From: Dimorphilus gyrociliatus
Lineage: Eukaryota > Animalia > Annelida
Direction of reading: 5' to 3'
NCBI GenBank assembly: GCA_904063045.1
Contig: CAJFCJ010000005.1
Location: 2,722,165 to 2,786,164 of the forward strand
DNA length: 64,000 nt
The stretch's first letter is position 1. Each line of letters opens with the position of its first letter. The notes under the pieces are model-generated. The model made no database searches. It was not told where the DNA came from and was given only the letters and a program-made list of their open reading frames with translations. Of the stretch, positions 32,341 through 45,887 are shown piece by piece. A program made the position numbers and the translations under genes.

Positions 32341-32848
32341 ATGGCTACTACAGATGATGCTACAAATACACCGGATTTACCGCTGATCGACGCTTTTCTA
32401 TCGAAACTCTCTCAATTCGATAAATATGAGCTATGTTCTCAACAATCTTCTCATTGGATGTTGTCTACCAACGACTTCAAAGTGCCAACAGAACCTCCGC
32501 TTGGTATTATTACGAGTATGATACCCATAAGTGGAAATTCGTCAGTAGTTCTCCTTCCAACCCTTGATAATTCGGAAGATGACGTTTTAGATATAAGACT
32601 AATTCATCAAATGATTAGGGAGTTAACTTTTGGAATATACGCCTTAAATTCAATGCCCGCTTGTTCCCTAGAAGCTAACTACGATCAGGTAATTAAAAAG
32701 TTTTTAAAGGGTCATTTGTTCAATGCCAATTATCTCTTGTTCACACAATGTAAATCACATATAAGGCTATTTGCATATATTTTATGGTATACACAGAGAG
32801 ATAGTTTCAAGTGTATTATCTTCAAAATCAATCAATATACTGTACAGT

Positions 32849-32892
<44 letters not shown>

Positions 32893-35800
32893 ATCTGTGT
32901 GTGTGTACTGTATGTACTTTTATATTTATAATTACAAATATTTATATATGAATATTTGCAGAGTACTCAATGCCAACTACCACCAGCTTACATAGATACC
33001 AAAGTTGGTCAACTAATGATCCATGTAGATTACATAATGAAGGTAAGCATTCAAACAAGGTTTACTCAATATATCATTCTTTTCACCCGGGGCTTTTTTA
33101 TTAAATATGCTTGCAAGGTTTGTTTAAACAAGACTATAAATTAAACAATTAAATAGAACGTACAAGTGGTTATATTTCATGCAATTTACTGAATATATTT
33201 ATTGCAAAAACATATATATATATATATATATACATTTATAGATATTTAATGTGTATTTTTTATTATATAGTCTTTGTGGCATGGAGCGTATATGCCGACA
33301 GATAAGAGAAAGGCGTTTACGGATGTTTGGAGAACAAATTTAGTAGTTAATACTTCAACTGGTAAACCAGAAACTAAAAAGCCTATAATAACTGAATTTA
33401 TAAGTGCTGGTTAGTTTATCTACATAGTTATTTATTATCCTTCCCTCACGCTCTCTTTTCTTTTCTTGCTCATTCGTTTAGTTGTTTAGTTAACTTATTT
33501 ATGAATATTATTATTGATAACAGTGCTAATTTAATATTATTATATACACCTCCTCTTGTTATTCATATAGTTTTCAAAAGAATTAATAGGCCCATTTTAT
33601 TCGGTTATAGCCGTAAGTTATAATTGTAAGAATGTTTTTTAACCAATTAGCCGCTTAATCCAATATAAACAAGATAGGTATGCATTATTATTATTACAAA
33701 GATTGAGAACTTGTAAAGGAAATAGGAATTAAAAGGAAAAAAAATCGATAAGATATCGATTGAAATGATTTTTCTCTCTATTGCTAATTAATTTTATTTC
33801 TTACTCTCTTCCTTCATCCGTAGTTCCGGTTTCCTTTTTTAAATAAAGCTAATTTTGTTTCCCTTTTTTCCTTTTTTCTCTATAATTAGGCACAATGGAT
33901 ATTACAAAAGATCCAGAGTATGCTAACGTTTATGATAATTTGAAAACTATGGATACCGATGCCGAAGAGGCAAAATTTTTTATGAACCATGTTGATGATA
34001 TGGCAATGATAATGACGATTTATCAAAGAGCTATTATACAACATAGGTAAGTAACGAAGGAATAGATAAGCACTTTTAATATTTGCCTACTATTAAATTA
34101 ATTTAATTAATTTATTCGCTAGAAACTTATTTCTAATCGATGCCGATTGGATCGTATCTTCAAATATAAGGACTATTGATGAAAAAGTAGATAAAAACGC
34201 TTATGAACGTCTACATAATAGATTACAATTACATGAACTTATAATCAACGAATACTTGTCTCAAAAGAAGGAAACAGCTTTTAACCTGCAAGTAAGTGGA
34301 TAATTTAGAATGACACTTGTATTTTATTTATTGTAAACTAATATATCTTTATTCGTTAAATAGATGATGAAATTAATTAGTTTTCTAGTCCCGTGGCTAG
34401 TCGGTATGAAAAAACGTATGAAAATACCTAATCTTAAAACTTTTCTACCAAATTTAAAGGGTAAGCTATAGCCTATTCTTCTCTCGTAGTCTCATTAACG
34501 ACTTTAAGACAATAGATTGAACAAAAAGCTAGTAAATATTTTACTATCCTTTCTTCAAATCGTTAATAATCTTATTAATATTTAAAGCGACTGAGTGTAA
34601 ATATAGAGTGGGAATGAGGGGAAGAAAGAAAGGGGCGGTGGGAAAGAATATTTGATCTAAAACCGTTAAATATATTGATCATTTATCGATTGCGTTGTAA
34701 AATAAATCTTCTATATAACCTCATTAGTGATTTCGTCTTTTTTTCCATAAATACAAAATAATCACATGTTATTTATAAATACAGTAGATTTATTTTTTCT
34801 ATATATAAAAATAAATAGATTATTCTTGTTTTAATGTTTCTGTTTATGATTTAGGCGATGAAGTTAGAACAGAAAGGGAACTTCCACCTTTAATTCAATC
34901 TCCTGACTTTAAGTGTAAGAATTTCATGTTCGGACCCGAAAGATATTTTCATCTTCATGGATGCATACAATTCGATCATGAAACGCCTTCTTGCGGAGAA
35001 GTTCCGGAAGAACTCGCTGCAAGACATGATGAAATTCTGGAACAAACTATTGCGAGAGATAGCAGTTGGTTGGATCCTAATACTAAACCTCCACAGGATA
35101 ACGTCTATCCCGCTGAAATAGTTACCATTAATGGGAAAAGATACCACGCAATTGCCATTCAATTTGAAACCTATTATCATCAACAGCCGCAAAAGTTTGT
35201 TTATATAATATAATAATTACTATATAATTGAATAAAATAAATCCAATTTAATCTTGTAGACCTCCTTGGGTATGTACGATGAGTGAAAGAATAGGCCAAA
35301 TGCGACTAAAGACTATGACTGAACACGACGTACACGACGTATTTAGAAAACATTTTGGAACTAAGGTAAAACAGACGAAGTGTATCATAAATATAGATCT
35401 CATAATCTACCTCGTTCTATTTACTTTTTGTCAACAGAAAGCTATAAACTATAAAAATCAATTACTAGGCCTATCAGCCGCAGCTAGGAGGGGATTAGTA
35501 GCAACTTTTAATACTTTAGCAAGAAAATGCCCCCCATCAAGACTTGGTAAACAAGATGATAACGGACTATCTTTGTTACATCATGCAGCAATGAATAATA
35601 GACCCCACGTAATAGCTCAACTTATCCTTCACAGTATGGATGTGAATGTACGAAAGAGTAACAATATACAAATTTCTGGTGAGTATTGAAATCTCTGTAA
35701 AAGTAATATTTGATTTTTTTTAAAAAAAAAAAAGAGGTGGTTTTTATTTTCTTTTTAAGAACTTTGCAGTGAAAAAATCTATGATTCTTTTTTTATTATA

Positions 35801-38800
35801 ACCCTCTCCCTCAAAAAGAAAACAATAACAACAACAATAACAAACATTTTTGTTTTTATACATATTTTTTATTATTAATATTGTTTTACAAAAAACTTTT
35901 ACTTAATTAATAATTATTCTGATATTTTAATCATCTGCAGACGAAACAGGTATTCTTTAAATTAAAATTGAAAGAAAAATCATTTACACTCCTTTTTATA
36001 TACAATATCACAATTTTGATATAAACAATATTGGCAGACAAACAAAACAAACTAAAATCAAATAGCAATAGTCATATACCTTCTGATTTCAATCATCATG
36101 TTTTTTTTTCATTTTTCTTTCCATTTTTCCTCTTTATCTTCCTCTGTCTACTTATCTCTCTCTCTCTGTCTCTCTCTATCTCTCTATTGAATGAATAATG
36201 TTTCTCATAGGCTATACAAAATTTTTAAGATACATAAAAAGCAGACATTTTCTCTTGAATGCAGTTCAATAGTTCATTTAACATAAAAGCATGACGAATA
36301 TTAGTTTCAAATTTGAAGTAAATCTCACTTGATTATTGAAATAATCTTTCCCTGATTTTATCACTCCAACAAAATGGCAAAACTTTAAAAATTAATTGTA
36401 ACAAGACGTTTCAATTGTAGTTGAAAATTGCATCTATTACAGTACTTTATTTTTTATTGACCATATCTGTTTATTCGTTTATTTATTATGCATGTGACAT
36501 GTTTAATAGGTGGTTACACAAAAACTGGTATGTATTACATAAAAATTAAAACGAAATAAGACAATCAATATTCAAAATTAATTTATTCATAAATAAAATA
36601 ATGAATATTCATACGAAAAAATAACTTTGTCTTTTTCTGGCTTAATTTTTATGTCAAAAAAACTCAAAAAAAACAAAAAAAACGAAGCAATCGAAACTTT
36701 TTTTTTTATCAAAACAATAAAAAACAAAAAGCAATCTATACATTTTCCTTTTTCAATATATTCTATAATTTGCATTTTTTTAATTATATTCATTATTATT
36801 TTAATTAGCTAATTAAAAAAAGAATTTATTCATTGTTTTTAATATTCATATTTGTAGTAAATGTGTATTTATTTATAAAATTTCTATGTAATATTCTTTT
36901 ATTTTGTTTTTTTTTTTTCAATTTTTTTTCTCTTCAGTTTTTGTACCCAGTTCCAAAAGAACGGGTATGATACTTGCACATTTTACTAGGCTTAATAAAA
37001 ACAAAAAGAGAGAGAATCAGATATTCATTAATTTACAGCTTTTTGGATTAATTATTTCGCATATGTATATATGAAACTTATGCTAATTATTGTTATCGAA
37101 CACTAACAAATAGCTTAATTTATATCCATATGCATGAGATATAAAAATAGTAAGAAAACTTTTTAAGCATGTATATACTAATAAATATGTACTGTATATA
37201 CATAGTACATAGTTAAAGCACACTCTGTTTGAATATATGTATCTATACATATGACACATGTTTCCAATCATCTATAAGCATACTGTATATGTACATTATA
37301 TATCTATATATGATTTTATCACGCTATGAAAAATTATACTTCACGCCATAAATTGATTTTATTATTATAATTCTTTTTCTTATCTTTTTTATTATTATTT
37401 TATTCAAACTCAAACGATTTTAATACTTACACAATGTTCTATTTTTTTCCCTTTCTTTAATTTAAAACATATAGGACCAACGGCATTACATCTTGCTGCT
37501 CGTTGCGGTTCATTCGAAGCTGCAACTTGCTTAGTAAGTTAAGTTAAAAAAATTTTAATAATTATTGAATAAATACCAATTCTATTTGATTTAGGTTGCT
37601 AATTATGCTAATTTATTGGCGACTGATCAAGATGGTTGGGTTCCTGCTCATTATGCAGCATTCTACGATAATGTACCAATTTTAAAACTATTAATTGGTA
37701 AGGAAAGTGCACTTTTAGAATTTCAAACCAAAGACGAGTAAGTAATAAATGAAAACTAGTAAAACTATAAGATTTATTATAATGACTACAATTTTTTATC
37801 AACTACTTAAAAGTATTCGATCTACACCTCTACTTTTGGCTGCAAGCTCTGGAGCTTTGGAAGCTTTAAAGTGCTTATTGGATTTAGGAGCCTACGTTCA
37901 AAGAAAAGATGACATGGTTAATTTAGTTTATTAAAATAGTCTTTATAAAATTTCTTTATGTCTTTTACAAATCGTTTTCTTTTTTAGAATAATAACGTAA
38001 TAGAAGTTGCAGCAATGAGGTTTCATACAAATGTCTTAGAGTTTTTTATTGATTGGGACCACCCTGAAGTTCCAGTTTGGGAAATTATCGTTGGTATGCT
38101 GAAAGGGGATGACCTAGCTAGAAAAGATAGCGCTGTTAAATGTATTGATGTACTTGCTATTTCGAGAGAGGATAATTGGAAAGAGATATTAAACGCCGGT
38201 GGAGTTCCGGCAGTTGTCTCCCTACTATATCTTAACGACGAACGCATTCAGGCCGTCGCAGTTGCAGTTCTTTGCAGTATTTCTCAGCATCAAGATGTAC
38301 GACTAGCTCTATGTCAAACTAATGCTGGGCCAATCCTTATACAACTACTATCATCTCCAAACGATGATATACAAGCTCGAGCATCTATAGTCGTAGCCGA
38401 TATGGCTTGTATAGAAGGTCAACAAGAATTACTCTCTTCACAAGGTGCCATTTCTCCACTTGTCAATTTACTAGATTCAGAGGTTAAAGAGCAATTGAAA
38501 TACTTTTTAAATAAGATATATTTTACATGAAATGTCTGCAGATTGAAGATGTACTCGTCTATGCTGTAAATGCTATAAAAATGATGTCACAGGGATGTCC
38601 AGATATTCAGACAGAAGCCGCTAAAGGTGGAGTTATTGAACCTTTAGTAGAATTTCTCTCAATTCATTCAGGTAAGTGAAAGATTAAACATGGATTAAAT
38701 TTTATATAAATATTTATTCGTAAATTTTATGGACATTGTGTAAAACAGAAAAACTTCAAGCTTCGGCATCATCTGCTATAGCCGCTGTATCAGGCGGTCA

Positions 38801-41013
38801 TAAAGATAATCAAGATACTTTGATAAAAGAAGGAGTTGTAAAGTATGCCTACAAATTATTTTTGCAAAGTTGACATATATTTATCGGATTAAAATGTTTG
38901 CTTATATAAAAAACAGACCACTCATAAAGTTGATTAAAGGTCACCAAGTCACGGCACAAGTTCAGGCAGCTTGCGCATTAGAAGCTCTTTGTGATGGCAA
39001 TTCCTCTGCTCAATTAGCTTTTATGGAAGAAGATGGTCCGAAAGCTTTACTTAAGCTTTTTAAAGTAAAACCTTCAACTTTAGGATAGAATATAATAATT
39101 AATAAATTCCATCTATTTGTATAGTATTGGTCGGTTCAAGTAAGGGAGCAGGGTGCTTGTGCACTTTGGTCTTTAGCGGGTGATAAAAAGAAGCAACAAA
39201 AAGAAATAGCAAATCATATTGGTCTTCACAGATTAATTGAAATGCTGTTAGCTACATCAGAAAAGTTGCAGTATGTAGGTTGCATGGCTATGAATGCCCT
39301 TGGATACGAAGATATGGAGGAACAAAACAAGATAGTTAAACAAGATGGAATAGGTCCCTTAGTTCGTCTCCTTAGATCTCCAAAAACTTCTGAAAGAGTA
39401 TTATTAATAGTAATTCAACTAATTGGAACTTTATGCATAGGTAATATTTTTTCCCTTTTGACGAAACTCTATAATAACATTATGTTTGACTTGCTCTTTT
39501 TACTTTTCACCTATAGGAGTGGCTCACAGAAACAATAAGGTCTCACAGAAGAGAATGTCAGAAGAGAATTCAATACCTAGTTTAGTACAGTTAATCATTT
39601 CACCTCCAAACGATGACATAAAGGTAGAAGCCGCTTGCACTTTAGCTTGCGTAGTCCTTGGTAATAGCAGTAACCAGCAACTTCTTAAAATGGAAGAGAC
39701 TTTTGACATCAGTTACGTACTAGAGCTCTTATATTCGCCTATTGACAGAATTCGATTAAGAGCCGGCTTCGCCCTCTCTCTTTTCGCCTTTAATAATACT
39801 ACACAGCAATATGCTGTAAAGGAGGCGGGAGGATTAGAATATTCATTCTTCAGATCCTTCCTTAAATCCGAAGATGATCTAGAAAAATGTAATTCCGCCT
39901 TTCAAATGGTTGTCTTATCAAGAGTGGTGAATGACAGAGATCAGGTATCACTTACTGCAGAAGGTATTTCAATGTTAGTCGAAGTTTTGAAATCAAAAAA
40001 TGATTCAACGGTTAGCGAAGCGGCCAGCTTAATTGCCAGCGTCGCTCACACGAGAACAGGTATTCCTGATGCTCTCGTTACAGTTGGAGTAATGGATGTA
40101 CTTATATCAAAAATAAATAGGGAAAGTGATGACTATTCAAGAAATGAACATTTAAGATTTATGTGCGCAACAGCCCTCGGTTATATGACATTTCATAGGC
40201 CGGCAATGAGAATTTTATTAACTGCATGTAGATCAACACCCAAATTGTTTGAATCATATGTCGAAAATTTGGGTAAGGACTTTAAAGCATCTCAAGAATT
40301 TTTTGAAGAATTTGAACGATGTAAAGCCGTTGGAATGCCTTGCTTAAGGTTAGTTATATTTATTGAATTGTATTATTTTTCCTCTTTAATTTCTATACTA
40401 ATAATATTCAATATATTAATAGCTTAGAAAAGTATGGTGGTCCACCTATATTGGGAAAAAAGAATGTTCCAAGTAAGTACAGTTATATTTTTATAATCTA
40501 TTTTTAATTTAGTTTTTAACAATGTAGTTTTGAATCAAAACAATATTAAGATTCAAAATATAACTTGTATGAAACACATGCAGAGAACAAAACATCTGTT
40601 TTTAAGAAATAAGGTGAATTCAATTCACTTGAACACTTTTTTAATTACTATATACTTATAACGCATAGACAGTAAAATTTGTATATTTAATACATCGCAC
40701 AAATGTTACCTTTTTCACTGAATGGTACTTAAAACAAGCATGAAAATTTTTTCTTTAACGTATATGTTTGATTCTAAATCTATATTTTCTTATAGTGAAA
40801 CGACCATTGACAACTCAAACACGGAAGGCAACGGCATCAAGACCCATTCGTGTGACATCAGCACCACCTAGAAGTCTTAGAACGGCTTCAAATGTAACGA
40901 GTATGACTGTTTCCCGACCACCTACTTCTGGAAATACCTCTAGAATTACTATTGATGAAAATCCATCAAAGTCCGTATTCAAAAGTAGACTCAGTGCTTG
41001 GGGAAGTCGATAA
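32341..41013 (+). CDS. ANKAR: Ankyrin and armadillo repeat-containing protein (multi-exon)
   Basis: First exons 32341-32688, 32962-33042, 33271-33409 give SLEANYDQSTQCQLPPAYIDTKVGQLMIHVDYIMKSLWHGAYMP, as I recall from the ANKAR N-terminus. Ankyrin repeats (GLSLLHHAAMNN, GPTALHLAARCG, GWVPAHYAA, STPLLLAASSG) and armadillo repeats (GGVPAVVSLL, GAISPLVNLL, GIGPLVRLL) follow. Last exon 40796-41013. Confidence 0.92.
35941..35949 (+). CDS. ANKAR: Candidate 9-nt ANKAR microexon (phase 1-1)
   Basis: tcatctgcAG|ACGAAACAG|GTATTC, preceded by about 120 nt with no AG. Confidence 0.5.
36510..36527 (+). CDS. ANKAR: Candidate 18-nt ANKAR microexon (phase 1-1)
   Basis: gtttaatAG|GTGGTTACACAAAAACTG|GTATGT; TGCATG at 36489-36494; about 65 nt AG-free upstream. 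Confidence 0.62.
36938..36964 (+). CDS. ANKAR: Candidate 27-nt ANKAR microexon (phase 1-1)
   Basis: Long poly-T/pyrimidine tract, ctcttcAG|TTTTTGTACCCAGTTCCAAAAGAACGG|GTATGA; TGCATG downstream at 37131-37136. Confidence 0.62.
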
Positions 41014-43076: not shown

Positions 43077-43551
43077 GTTTATGTATTATCTTTTTCTTAT
43101 CAAGCAGAAAATGAGAATAGTCAAGGTTTTACAATAATATACTGAACAAATAAAAACCAAAAACGAGTCAGAAAGTGTGTTTAAAGTTTTCGTTAGAGTT
43201 GACTTCTGCTCGACACAATTTAAACTAATTCTGAATCCGTATTTCGGTTTTTATAACTCCCCGGCTTACAGAAGTCCGAAAAACCGGAAGTGTAGTAATA
43301 TTCATTTTCCCATGAAAAACAAAATAAACTTGTGTTTAGATATTAGAATTTTAATTTTTGAATACTTTTAAGAGTAAAGATAAATATATTAAATTTTTTG
43401 CGATTTATTTAAATACGAAAATAACTTTGATCACATGACTTCATCGCCATGTAAAGCGACGTGCTGGTAGCAAATTTTCAAGTAATTTCGTCAACATTTC
43501 TGCTCTATTTTAACAGACATCCCTTCTGCATCAGATTAAGTTGTATACAAA
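43077..43551. promoter_or_regulatory. Bidirectional promoter region CCNH/AP3D1 (475 nt between ATGs)
   Basis: Head-to-head ATGs. ETS ACCGGAAGTG at 43283-43292; M-box/CLEAR-like GATCACATGAC at 43429-43439. Confidence 0.7.
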
Positions 43552-45887
43552 ATGGCTTTGACCTTAAAAAAGGTCAAAGGAACTCTGGAAAGAGTGTTAG
43601 ACAAAAATTTACAAGATCTCGTTCGTGGCATAAGGAATCATAAGGAAAATGAGGTGACAATTTTTTTCTTCGTTTAAGTCCATTTCTATCGTATGACAGT
43701 AGTCAAGGATGGAATAGAGTAGCAATTATTGTACTCTTGCGGCAATCGATTGCTTTTGTGACAGAATTTAATGTTAATCCAATATTATAGAGCAAATATA
43801 TCGCGGAGTGTATAGACGAAATCAAACAAGAATTAAAACATGACAACATCTCTGTTAAAGCAAATGCAATTACAAAGTTGACCTATGTAAGTGTGTTTAC
43901 GTAAAGAATTAATGAGAGATGCTAATCGATAAAATATCATCTTTCCAGTTACAAATGCTAGGCTATGATATAAACTGGGCTGCTTTTCATGTAATTGAAG
44001 TAATGAGCTCAACCAAGTTCACATTTAAAAGAGCTGGATATTTGGCGGCTGCACAGTCTTTCAACGATGGTACGGACGTTTTAATGTTGACAACAAATTT
44101 GATTCGGAAAGACCTTAGTAGTTCAAATATGTACGATGCAGCTGTTGCATTGAACGGACTATCTTGCTTTGTAACACCTGACTTAGCAAGAGATTTAGCT
44201 AGTGATATTAGTACTTTGGTACGTACTCAAAGCACTGTTCTTTTTTCGTCATATTACAGAATTATATACATTTTAATCGACAAATCTAGATGACATCAAC
44301 TAAACCTTATTTAAGGAAGAAAGCAGTCTTGATAATGTATAAAATCTTTCTGAAGTATCCTGATTCTCTTCGACCAGCATTTCCTAGATTAAAAGAGAAG
44401 TTAGAGGATCCTGATCAAGGTTAATTTTGTAAAAATTCTTCCCATGACTTATTTAAAGTATTTTACATTCATTAATATAAATTATTAACAGGCGTACAAT
44501 CCGCTGCTGTAAATGTGATATGCGAGTTGGCCCGTAAGAACCCGAAAAATTATTTATCATTGGCTCCGCTCTTCTTTAAACTTATGACAAGTTCGACAAA
44601 TAACTGGGTTCTTATAAAAATTATTAAATTGGTTAGTATTAATTCTTTTATTCGAAGTGAATTTATTCATATTTATATTCTCACTAAATAAAGTTTGGAG
44701 CCTTAACGCCGCTAGAACCTAGACTAGGAAAGAAGTTAATTGAACCGCTAACGAATCTAATTCACAGGTAAATATATAGATTATTTTAAATGAAAATTTT
44801 TGAATATTATTAATCAAAATCGTTTAAACAGTACATCAGCTATGTCTCTATTGTATGAGTGTATCAATACGGTTATAGCTGGTAAGTAAACTATTTATAT
44901 TGTTTTTGAAAAATCTCCTAGTTGAAGGGAGTAAAGGCGAATGAGAGATTTTTTGTCATAAAAAATGAAAAGGACAAATAGATTCGTGCAAAATTTAAAA
45001 GCCATGCTAAGCTAAGCGCAAATCGATTTTTTTTTAAAAAACACTCAAAAATTTCCTTTATATTGATAATATATACTCCTTAATAAGTTTCCAAGATAAG
45101 TTACTCTTTTTACTTAAACTACTTCTTTCTTTACTTTAAAAATGTTAATTACTCTTAATACTATTATTATTTCCTTATCTTTTGTTTCTTATAAAGATAA
45201 TCTTTTTAAGAGCCTTGAAATGGTTGTTATTCTATTTAATAATAATCTATTTCTTCTAGATAATTATACCAAATATATTGCAATACATAAGTGCTACTTA
45301 TAATTTTTAATTACCTTAATTAAGTGCCTTTAATTTTATTATTCTTTACACTTTCCCTGAAGTTAATATAAAAAATTTTTTGTATTGCTTTTGTTGTTTA
45401 ATCACTTTATCACCAACTTATTTAACTATTATATATATTAGCTAAGTCTCATTTTTCTATTTTTGTAAACAAATTGTCAATATTTTGTAGTTTTTTTCCT
45501 TTTTATTAAACTCTAAAAGACTCCATAGAAAAAAAAGTAAAAAAGCTTAAACTATACAAAAATTTCCAACCTCTTTTTTCTTTTAATATATAAAATTAGA
45601 TCACGTTTTTTATGTGGTGTACTTGAATTGCCCCAATTTTCTAGACAATTTTCTTAGACCTGAAGAGAACACAGAATGTCTACGAGCTGATTATAGAAAT
45701 TACTTCTTTTTCTTATTTGTAGTAACTTTTTTTATTATATATATATTGTTATTTATATCAATAATTTTAACTCTTTCTCTCTTTTTTTTTAATTGATTGT
45801 GTTGTAAACATAATGGAGGAGTTGGAGGAATTTAAATTTCTTGACTTATTTCTTTTAAGCGTATTGCATGAAGATTAAAAACATTTT

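What the first reader, a model, noticed from the sequence alone, without database searches (positions are those of the whole stretch)
35679..37474. Three frame-preserving microexons (9, 18, 27 nt) that would edit an ankyrin-repeat loop of ANKAR
Seen: ANKAR's longest intron (1796 nt, phase 1; most neighbours are 60-100 nt) contains three AG|exon|GT units at 35941-35949, 36510-36527 and 36938-36964. All are multiples of 3 and stop-free, and each follows a 65-120 nt AG-free pyrimidine-rich stretch. Each ends in a Thr codon plus G (ACA G, ACT G, ACG G), and the upstream exon ends TCT G, so any combination rebuilds S/T-G-P-T-A-L-H at the start of the next ankyrin repeat. Full inclusion adds 18 aa (DETGGYTKTVFVPSSKRT). 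TGC lies just upstream of two acceptors, and TGCATG occurs at 36489 and 37131. Established: UGC-dependent SRRM3/4 (eMIC) and UGCAUG-binding Rbfox proteins control neural microexons in bilaterians, and ankyrin beta-hairpin loops form the ligand-binding surface. Inference: up to 8 combinatorial ANKAR isoforms with tuned binding loops, in a gene whose function is poorly understood.
Basis: partly seen in the sequence, partly recalled or inferred. Interest (0 to 1): 0.82.

Follow-up and report, generated by a model that had tools for sequence, protein, structure and literature searches.

The report
Hidden tiny exons in worm ANKAR
The long intron of the ANKAR gene of the miniature worm Dimorphilus gyrociliatus holds three tiny exon-like units at exactly the spot where ANKAR genes from flatworms and oysters to mammals carry optional small exons that lengthen one ankyrin finger loop. 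One of the three is shown to be spliced in RNA; the other two are plausible but unproven.

Summary
The gene is D. gyrociliatus ANKAR (published model DgyrCDS3724), and that model joins 35678 directly to 37475 with no microexon.

**RNA evidence.**
- One RNA run shows the 35678 donor spliced to the acceptor of the first unit (35941).
- The same contig then runs unspliced to 36537.
- A second contig runs unspliced from about 36889 through the third unit into the next exon.
- So only the m1 acceptor is proven. No donor use, and no splicing of m2 or m3, is seen.

**Comparative evidence.**
- In more than 60 ANKAR proteins, this junction (…RRNNILST|GPTALH…) is the site of isoform-specific inserts.
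- Macrostomum has a genomic 18-nt phase-1 microexon ending Thr+G.
- Oyster, scallop, clam, mussel, acorn worm and carnivore records show several cassettes, some used in combination.
- Many cassettes end in Thr+Gly, as all three candidates do.
- An AlphaFold model puts the flatworm insert at the tip of the loop between ankyrin repeats 1 and 2.
- Sequence similarity of the cassettes is weak. Only m2 (GGYTKT against snail AYTKTF) stands out.

**Regulation.** Control by SRRM or Rbfox is untested. GCATG is enriched here, UGC is not.

**Verdict.** This is probably a real but only partly proven member of a known kind. The scan has noted many other microexon candidates in this genome, none in ANKAR.

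The parts
32341..41013 (+). ANKAR gene of Dimorphilus gyrociliatus (published model DgyrCDS3724, 1410 aa)
   Evidence: P0272 maps at 95-100% identity to window exons from 32341 to 41010. Pfam finds Ank in the exon 35438-35677 and Arm in later exons.
35438..35678 (+). Upstream exon (E_up). It encodes ankyrin repeat 1 and ends ...NNIQIS plus 1 base (G), with donor GTGAGT.
   Evidence: Exon borders come from spliced RNA contig 1. Orthologous exons end ...NNILST plus G in the same phase.
35679..35940 (+). 262-nt intron removed in RNA (35678 donor joined to 35941 acceptor)
   Evidence: Joint 35677->35940 (cut +1), GT..AG, in a 2460-nt contig of run X1 with 242 letters on the shorter side.
35941..35949 (+). 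m1, candidate 9-nt microexon (DET). Acceptor proven, donor CAG|GTATTC not seen in use.
   Evidence: Acceptor use. If the donor is not used, the frame stops after DETGIL (TAA at 35959-35961). It passes the splice filter and ends ACA G.
36510..36527 (+). m2, candidate 18-nt microexon (GGYTKT), donor CTG|GTATGT
   Evidence: The donor ranks 2nd of 59 GT sites; the acceptor is weak. It is the best match of all intron units to cassettes of other ANKARs (snail AYTKTF, P=0.04). It has the same length and phase as the Macrostomum microexon. No spliced RNA is seen.
36938..36964 (+). m3, candidate 27-nt microexon (VFVPSSKRT), with a strong pyrimidine tract and donor CGG|GTATGA
   Evidence: Pyrimidine content is 0.90 in the 40 nt upstream. 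The donor ranks 4th of 59 and the acceptor about 5th of 52. It passes the strict filter. It ends ..KRT+G like the oyster ..RKAT+G, flatworm ..NRT+G and gar ..RERT+G cassettes, but the similarity is not above shuffles. RNA contig 2 runs unspliced through it.
37475..37533 (+). Downstream exon (E_down). It starts with GA, which completes the Gly codon, then PTALHLAARCGS (start of ankyrin repeat 2).
   Evidence: The donor at 37533 is used in RNA. GPTALH is conserved in all orthologues.
36489..36494 (+). TGCATG, 16-21 nt upstream of m2
   Evidence: GCATG occurs 4 times in the intron (36289, 36490, 37132, 37167) against 0.5 expected, P about 0.003.
37131..37136 (+). TGCATG, 167 nt downstream of the m3 donor

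Best explanation
The 1.8-kb intron of D. gyrociliatus ANKAR contains optional cassette microexons. They insert 3, 6 and/or 9 residues, each ending in Thr followed by the conserved Gly, at the tip of the beta-hairpin finger between ankyrin repeats 1 and 2.

This is the local version of an old feature of the gene. The same junction, in the same phase, carries optional small exons across Bilateria.

**Shown.**
- The sequence units exist as described.
- The m1 acceptor is used in RNA.
- The hotspot exists in other animals.
- The insert lies at the finger tip.

**Inferred.**
- The m1 donor is used, and m2 and m3 are spliced.
- Different combinations give loops of different length and charge, and so different partner binding.
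- The roughly 410-560-nt sub-introns are slowly or poorly removed in a species whose splicing is tuned to about 66-nt introns. That would explain the unspliced contigs.
For: 1. RNA: contig 1 of run X1 joins 35678 to 35941.
2. The only way to keep the conserved downstream ANK+ARM frame after that junction is to use the GT at 35950. Otherwise a stop follows after six codons.
3. The Macrostomum lignano genome has an 18-nt phase-1 microexon, ttttag|GCGAAAGGAATAGAACCG|GTGAGA. It lies inside the orthologous 3.6-kb intron, ends ACC G, and is present in some gene models and absent from others.
4. Isoform census:
   - oyster has 5-6 junction variants;
   - Argopecten shows none, A, B and A+B;
   - Ptychodera shows none, AYSL, and AYSL+GKETPVCPPK;
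   - Mya has 5 variants, including a 5-aa cassette;
   - carnivores show plus or minus 12 aa;
   - about a third of the cassettes end in Thr+Gly.
5. The orthologous intron is unusually long in other short-intron species too: Capitella about 4.07 kb against a median of 57 bp.
6. The Thr+G pattern occurs three times against 0.07 expected. A simple splice filter that picks only the true microexon in Macrostomum picks m1 and m3 here.
7. An AF2 model (pLDDT 90) puts the flatworm insert at the low-confidence tip of the inter-repeat loop.
8. Intron retention rises with intron length in this species (PMC7854359).
Against: - No RNA contig shows the m1 donor, or either splice site of m2 or m3, in use.
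- Both contigs run unspliced through these sites without a break. This suggests that in that sample spliced forms were absent or a minority (my reading of how Logan contigs behave is inference).
- Only one run was available, and only as contigs.
- The published model joins 35678 to 37475 directly.
- Peptide similarity to foreign cassettes is not significant for m1 and m3.
- The m2 acceptor is weak.
- The sequence statistics are post hoc. Against the window background they are modest: 3 observed against 0.4-1.4.
Confidence: 0.6

Rival explanations
1. Only the 35941 acceptor is real, and it gives an unproductive or truncating transcript. Splicing 35678 to 35941 and then reading on gives ...ISDETGIL-stop, which is either a poison or alternative last exon or a short N-terminal protein. 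m2 and m3 are chance AG...GT pairs. Full-length ANKAR comes from the direct 35678-37475 junction, as in the published model.
For: - Contig 1 runs unspliced from 35941 to 36537 after the junction.
- A stop lies at 35959.
- The published model uses the direct junction.
- A Macrostomum model (P0057) likewise ends inside this intron.
- m1 and m3 show no significant peptide similarity to known cassettes.
- The intron holds 23 stop-free AG|3n|GT units by chance.
Against: - No contig with the direct junction was laid, and contig 1 does not break at 35678.
- Three Thr+G-ending units, and no others, are unlikely by chance.
- Real cassettes sit at this junction in many animals.
- The published pipeline (AUGUSTUS, BLAT/GMAP, EVM) is of a kind that often misses exons of 9-27 nt (my own knowledge).
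Confidence: 0.25
2. The intron is long for other reasons: an internal promoter or enhancer, a transcript end and a new start (two transcription units), or an intron-hosted small RNA. The exon-like units are then by-products.
For: - The two contigs differ twofold in depth (153 against 326). They leave 36538-36888 uncovered. Contig 2 begins inside the intron.
- 944 intronic ATAC peaks lie in unusually long introns of this genome (PMC7854359).
- A weak C/D-box-like element lies at 36283-36361.
Against: - A transcript starting near 36889 has no in-frame ATG before E_down and many upstream ATGs.
- The uncovered stretch is extremely AT-rich and partly masked as repeat.
- ANKAR is one gene in all relatives, and the published model spans the intron.
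- The snoRNA-like hit is far below the family threshold (20 bits against 65, E=0.37).
- None of this explains the Thr+G units or the conserved hotspot.
Confidence: 0.1
3. All three units are constitutive exons that the annotation missed. They would always be included and would not form a regulated system.
For: - The E_up donor pairs with the m1 acceptor in the only contig across it, with no break at 35678.
- An earlier follow-up in this scan reported real tiny exons missing from the published SOWAH model in this genome (not tested here).
Against: - The contigs run unspliced through m2 and m3.
- In every well-annotated relative the cassettes at this junction are optional.
- The published transcript-informed model skips them.
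Confidence: 0.05

Closest known systems
Optional cassette exons at the ankyrin repeat 1/2 junction of ANKAR in other animals
   Same: They share the junction (...RRNNILST | GPTALH...) and phase 1. They are small and frame-preserving, several sit in one long intron, some are used in combination, and many end in Thr followed by the conserved Gly. Examples from RefSeq and GenBank isoforms:
- Macrostomum lignano: 18-nt microexon GERNRT.
- Magallana gigas: VLKKSSMYQ and GERESSRKAT.
- Argopecten: A, B and A+B.
- Ptychodera: AYSL with or without GKETPVCPPK.
- Mya: VMITN.
- Carnivores: a 12-aa cassette.

   Different: The D. gyrociliatus units are shorter (9, 18 and 27 nt). They are absent from the published model. 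Their peptide similarity to the foreign cassettes is only weak, with m2 GGYTKT against snail AYTKTF the best at P=0.04. Only one of the six splice sites is seen in RNA.
eMIC (Srrm234/SRRM4)-dependent neural microexons of bilaterians
   Same: The size range (3-27 nt) matches. They preserve the frame and lie in a surface loop of an interaction domain. UGC lies close to two of the three acceptors. An earlier follow-up in this scan reported an Srrm234 gene with an eMIC domain in this genome (not tested here).
   Different: There are no tissue data and no test of dependence. UGC is not enriched in the intron (9 against 13.8 expected). m3 has a strong pyrimidine tract and no UGC. From my own knowledge, ANKAR is not a known neural gene.
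Rbfox-regulated exons with flanking (U)GCAUG
   Same: GCATG occurs 4 times and TGCATG twice in the intron, against 0.5 and 0.25 expected. One lies just upstream of m2 and two lie downstream of m3.
   Different: The orthologous introns of Capitella, Macrostomum and Biomphalaria show no such enrichment. There are no binding or expression data.

Membership tests
Real cassette exon (spliced on both sides) | Acceptor used in RNA | tested here: inconclusive
   m1: yes, the joint 35678->35941 is seen. m2 and m3: not seen; contigs run unspliced across 36509/36510 and 36937/36938. Contigs can hide minority forms.
Real cassette exon (spliced on both sides) | Donor used in RNA | tested here: not met
   No joint starts at 35949, 36527 or 36964 in the one run available, which is held as contigs only. 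This shows that spliced forms were not seen, not that they are absent.
Real cassette exon (spliced on both sides) | Frame kept, no stop, in any combination | tested here: met
   The lengths are 9, 18 and 27 nt. The units are stop-free in phase 1. Each ends in G, which rebuilds the Gly codon with the GA of E_down.
Real cassette exon (spliced on both sides) | Conserved in relatives | tested here: inconclusive
   Position, phase and the Thr+Gly ending are shared with cassettes of many animals. Sequence similarity is significant only for m2. No DNA of a close relative could be read: P0001, at 97% identity, has no DNA available.
ANKAR (ankyrin and armadillo repeat-containing protein) | N-terminal ANKAR-specific region, then ankyrin repeats, then armadillo repeats; orthology to named ANKAR proteins | tested here: met
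   Pfam finds Ank and Arm in the exons. The N-terminal exon finds full-length ANKAR proteins of gar, shark, crinoid and others. The published model P0272 is listed among ANKAR orthologues.
eMIC/SRRM-dependent microexon | Length 3-27 nt and frame-preserving | tested here: met
   The units are 9, 18 and 27 nt.
eMIC/SRRM-dependent microexon | UGC motif shortly upstream of the 3' splice site | tested here: inconclusive
   m1 has cTGCag directly at the site. m2 has TGC 19-21 nt upstream. m3 has none. TGC is not enriched in the intron.
eMIC/SRRM-dependent microexon | Neural or tissue-specific inclusion that depends on the eMIC protein | not testable with these tools
   Only one run, kept as contigs, was available.
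Rbfox-regulated exon | (U)GCAUG in the flanking intron, conserved | tested here: inconclusive
   It is enriched in D. gyrociliatus (P about 0.003) but not in the orthologous introns of three other species.

The most novel reading that the evidence does not exclude
The finger between ankyrin repeats 1 and 2 of ANKAR is an ancient, bilaterian-wide programmable loop. Its length and charge are set by combinatorial use of cassette microexons, with a recurrent Thr-Gly ending. D. gyrociliatus keeps a minimal 9/18/27-nt version under tissue-specific (eMIC and/or Rbfox type) control. This would give a first functional handle on a gene of unknown function.
Probability: 0.2. Interest if true: 0.65.

Novelty: new member of a known kind. 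Interest (0 to 1): 0.5.

Why it matters
ANKAR is conserved from cnidarians to mammals, yet I found no functional study of it.

If the microexons are real, two things follow. The published worm gene model is incomplete. And the one place that evolution keeps variable by splicing, the first ankyrin finger, is marked as the likely partner-binding site. That gives a concrete target for binding and knock-down experiments.

It would also add a compact case of several microexons in one intron, in a genome where long introns are rare. This makes it a convenient model for how tiny exons are recognised.

Tried and rejected
- **Splice-site matrix.** A PWM built from only 10 RNA-supported introns was too noisy for acceptors; real sites scored from -9 to +10. 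I used it only for ranks.
- **Short-intron finder.** An automatic finder meant to enlarge the training set gave mostly false pairs inside long exons, and I dropped it.
- **Search with the E_up exon.** It found one 97%-identical relative (P0001), but its DNA could not be fetched. The other two hits (L001, L002) carry the mollusc-type NNILST ending and look like more distant lophotrochozoans, probably molluscs. In L001 a shared GTACCCA after an acceptor at the contig end looked like m3, but it is in another frame and within chance.
- **Single-sequence structure prediction.** It failed (pLDDT 44). The alignment-based run succeeded.
- **Trans-splicing.** I rejected it as an explanation for the start of contig 2. 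The 45 unlaid letters fit the masked 48-nt T-run, and the species has no spliced leader.
- **Rfam.** It found nothing above threshold in the intron.
- **Literature.** Searches found nothing on ANKAR splicing.
- **Joined spliced protein.** I neither built nor searched the joined D. gyrociliatus protein, with or without the units.
Full report
**What is there.**

- The exon ending at 35678 (…AAT ATA CAA ATT TCT G|GTGAGT) is followed by a 1796-nt phase-1 intron.
- The next exon starts at 37475 (atag|GA CCA ACG GCA TTA CAT).
- Inside the intron lie three AG|exon|GT units:

| Unit | Coordinates | Length | Peptide | Ends |
|---|---|---|---|---|
| m1 | 35941-35949 | 9 nt | DET | ACA G |
| m2 | 36510-36527 | 18 nt | GGYTKT | ACT G |
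| m3 | 36938-36964 | 27 nt | VFVPSSKRT | ACG G |

- Chaining the RNA-supported exons shows that both the direct junction and any combination of the units keep the frame.
- Neighbouring introns seen in RNA are 59-77 nt long.

**Which gene and organism.**

- Pfam finds an ankyrin repeat in the upstream exon and armadillo repeats in later exons.
- The N-terminal exon retrieves full-length proteins named ANKAR in gar, horn shark, a crinoid and others.
- Earlier notes of this scan name the genome as Dimorphilus gyrociliatus. I confirmed this: the published protein DgyrCDS3724 (P0272, 1410 aa) maps at 95-100% identity to window exons from 32341 to 41010.
- That model reads …NNIQIS-GPTALH…. It joins 35678 directly to 37475 and contains none of the three units.
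- The model was built with AUGUSTUS, exonerate, PASA (BLAT/GMAP) and EVM. From my own knowledge, tools of that kind commonly miss exons of this size.

**Chance.**

- The intron is AT-rich (G 8.9%). It holds 23 stop-free AG|3n|GT units in the right phase, so such a unit alone means little.
- The AG-free stretches upstream of the three acceptors are long but not the longest: ranks 4, 9 and 6 of 52.
- With a small position matrix, the donors of m2 and m3 rank 2nd and 4th of 59 GT sites, and m1 ranks 9th. The acceptors of m1 and m3 rank near the top, while that of m2 scores poorly. The matrix is noisy.
- I applied a simple filter: pyrimidine-rich upstream, last base G, donor consensus.
  - In the Macrostomum intron it picks only the true microexon.
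  - In Biomphalaria it picks the true cassette plus one other unit.
  - Here it picks m1 and m3, and m2 as well when the pyrimidine threshold is relaxed.
  - That is 3 units against 0.23 in dinucleotide shuffles, but against 0.8-1.4 per 1796 nt in the window at large.
- The most telling feature is the ending. Stop-free units that end in a Thr codon plus G before GT occur exactly three times in the intron, and they are the three candidates. Shuffles give a mean of 0.07 and P(>=3)=0.003. The window background is 0.4-1.1.
- These tests were framed after the units had been seen, so I treat them as moderate support only.

**RNA.**

Only one public run held the locus, and it is kept as assembled contigs. 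Its contigs are spliced at eleven GT..AG introns, so it is RNA.
- Contig 1 (2460 nt) joins 35678 to 35941, so the m1 acceptor is really used. It then continues colinear with the genome through the m1 donor, through m2 and 10 nt beyond, and ends at 36537.
- Contig 2 (3192 nt) begins in the masked T-run at about 36889. It runs unspliced through m3 and through the 37475 acceptor, and is then spliced normally to 40353.
- No contig shows the direct 35678-37475 junction.
- Nothing covers 36538-36888, which is extremely AT-rich.
- If the m1 donor is not used, the frame stops after DETGIL (TAA at 35959). A productive mRNA that starts with the observed junction therefore needs the GT at 35950.
- Since the contigs do not break at the candidate sites, spliced forms were probably a minority or absent in that sample. 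That reading rests on how such contigs are built, and it is inference.
- The genome paper reports a median intron of 66 bp, more retention for longer introns, and no trans-splicing (PMC7854359). Sub-introns of roughly 410-560 nt would fit the retained class.

**Relatives.**

- **Shared exon ending.** Searching the upstream exon found three genomic fragments. In two more distant ones the exon ends …NNILST plus G, in the same phase.
- **Macrostomum lignano.**
  - GenBank models read …ILST-GERNRT-GPTALH…, while WormBase models lack GERNRT.
  - In the genome, the six residues are an 18-nt exon, ttttag|GCGAAAGGAATAGAACCG|GTGAGA. It lies in the middle of the orthologous 3.6-kb intron, in phase 1, and ends ACC G.
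- **Census of more than 60 ANKAR proteins and isoforms**. This junction carries a wide variety of isoform-specific inserts:

| Animal | Variants at the junction |
|---|---|
| Magallana gigas | none; VLKKSSMYQ; GERESSRKAT; a 39-aa cassette; a variant ending …LLDIC |
| Argopecten | none; cassette A; cassette B; A+B |
| Mya | none; VMITN; two longer cassettes, alone or joined |
| Ptychodera | none; AYSL; AYSL+GKETPVCPPK |
| Mytilus | none; GEMEEKAT; a longer cassette |
| Littorina | none; two different cassettes |
| Carnivores and marsupials | with or without a 12-14-aa cassette |
| Gar, shad, frog, lizards | inserts ending …ERT, …EGT or …EET |

- **Thr+Gly ending.** Roughly a third of the cassettes end in Thr before the conserved Gly.
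- **Long orthologous intron.** In Capitella it is about 4.07 kb, although that species has a median intron of 57 bp.
- **Biomphalaria.** A paralogue has a single 96-nt cassette that begins AYTKTF.

**Are the worm units homologous to these cassettes?**

I compared every stop-free unit of the intron with a library of 35 foreign cassette peptides.
- m2 gave the best score of all units (YTKT shared with the snail cassette, P=0.04 against shuffles).
- m1 and m3 were no better than shuffles.
- What is shared is therefore position, phase, size class and the Thr+Gly ending, not sequence. The cassettes evolve fast.

**Where the insert sits.**

- An AlphaFold model of the Macrostomum segment, built with a 38-sequence alignment, has mean pLDDT 90.
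- GERNRT falls at model residues 83-88. This is the low-confidence tip of the 25-residue loop between the second helix of ankyrin repeat 1 (59-67) and the first helix of repeat 2 (93-100). Bridging contacts lie at residues 75 and 92.
The role of ankyrin fingers in binding is established knowledge; it is not shown for ANKAR.

**Regulation.**

- GCATG occurs four times in the intron (36289, 36490, 37132, 37167) against 0.5 expected, and TGCATG twice against 0.25.
- The orthologous introns of Capitella, Macrostomum and Biomphalaria show no such excess.
- TGC is not enriched (9 against 13.8). It does abut the m1 acceptor and lies 19-21 nt before m2.
- Earlier follow-ups of this scan report an Srrm234 gene with an eMIC domain in this genome. 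I did not test that.
- Tissue-specific or factor-dependent inclusion remains a hypothesis.

**Verdict.**

  - This is very probably the worm's version of an old, widespread set of optional small exons in the first ankyrin finger of ANKAR.
  - One acceptor is proven and the annotation lacks them.
  - Splicing of m2 and m3, combinatorial use, and SRRM/Rbfox control are not shown.
- My estimates are about 0.7 that m1 is a productive microexon, about 0.5-0.55 each for m2 and m3, and about 0.3 that all three are used in combination.
- In kind it is a new member of a known class. The cross-phylum hotspot is visible in database isoforms but, as far as my searches went, it is not described in the literature.

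**Limits.**

- There was one RNA run, as contigs only, and no close relative's DNA.

Noticed in passing
window 36283-36361 (+): A C/D-box snoRNA-like element sits inside the intron. The layout is ATAAAA-GC-ATGACGA (box C-like) ... TGATTA ... CTGA (box D) -TTTTAT, with a perfect 6-bp terminal stem. Rfam gives only a weak hit to ceN30 (20 bits against a threshold of 65, E=0.37). Its folding energy is no better than shuffles.
   Followed up: partly
window 36095-36318 (+): A roughly 95-nt CT-rich tract is followed by the second-longest AG-free stretch of the intron (139 nt) and an acceptor-like ttctcatag|GCTATACAAAA. With the preceding G this reads GYTK, 10 of 12 bases like the start of m2. A strong donor-like GAA|GTAAAT lies at 36318. 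The 107-nt unit would break the frame and contains a stop, so it could be a degenerate copy of m2 or a poison exon. The RNA contig runs through it unspliced.
   Followed up: partly
window 36538-36888 (+): There is no RNA contig coverage between the end of contig 1 (36537, 10 nt past the m2 donor) and the start of contig 2 (about 36889). Contig depths differ twofold (153 against 326). This could be AT-rich dropout or separate transcript ends and starts.
   Followed up: no
L004 1-473 and 501-35044 (Biomphalaria glabrata): Two ANKAR paralogues lie in tandem. One (P0078) has no insert at the junction. The other (P0102) has a constitutively modelled 96-nt cassette, so there the variants are fixed in duplicate genes rather than in isoforms.
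   Followed up: partly
L005 5796-5831 (Capitella teleta): The JGI model places a 36-nt exon (GTHRLQLCQVRS) in the middle of the orthologous 4-kb intron. It has no similarity to other cassettes, and I found no support for it.
   Followed up: no
window 43540-45000 (+): The next gene downstream encodes an AP-3 delta-like adaptin, judged by eye from open frames only.
   Followed up: no
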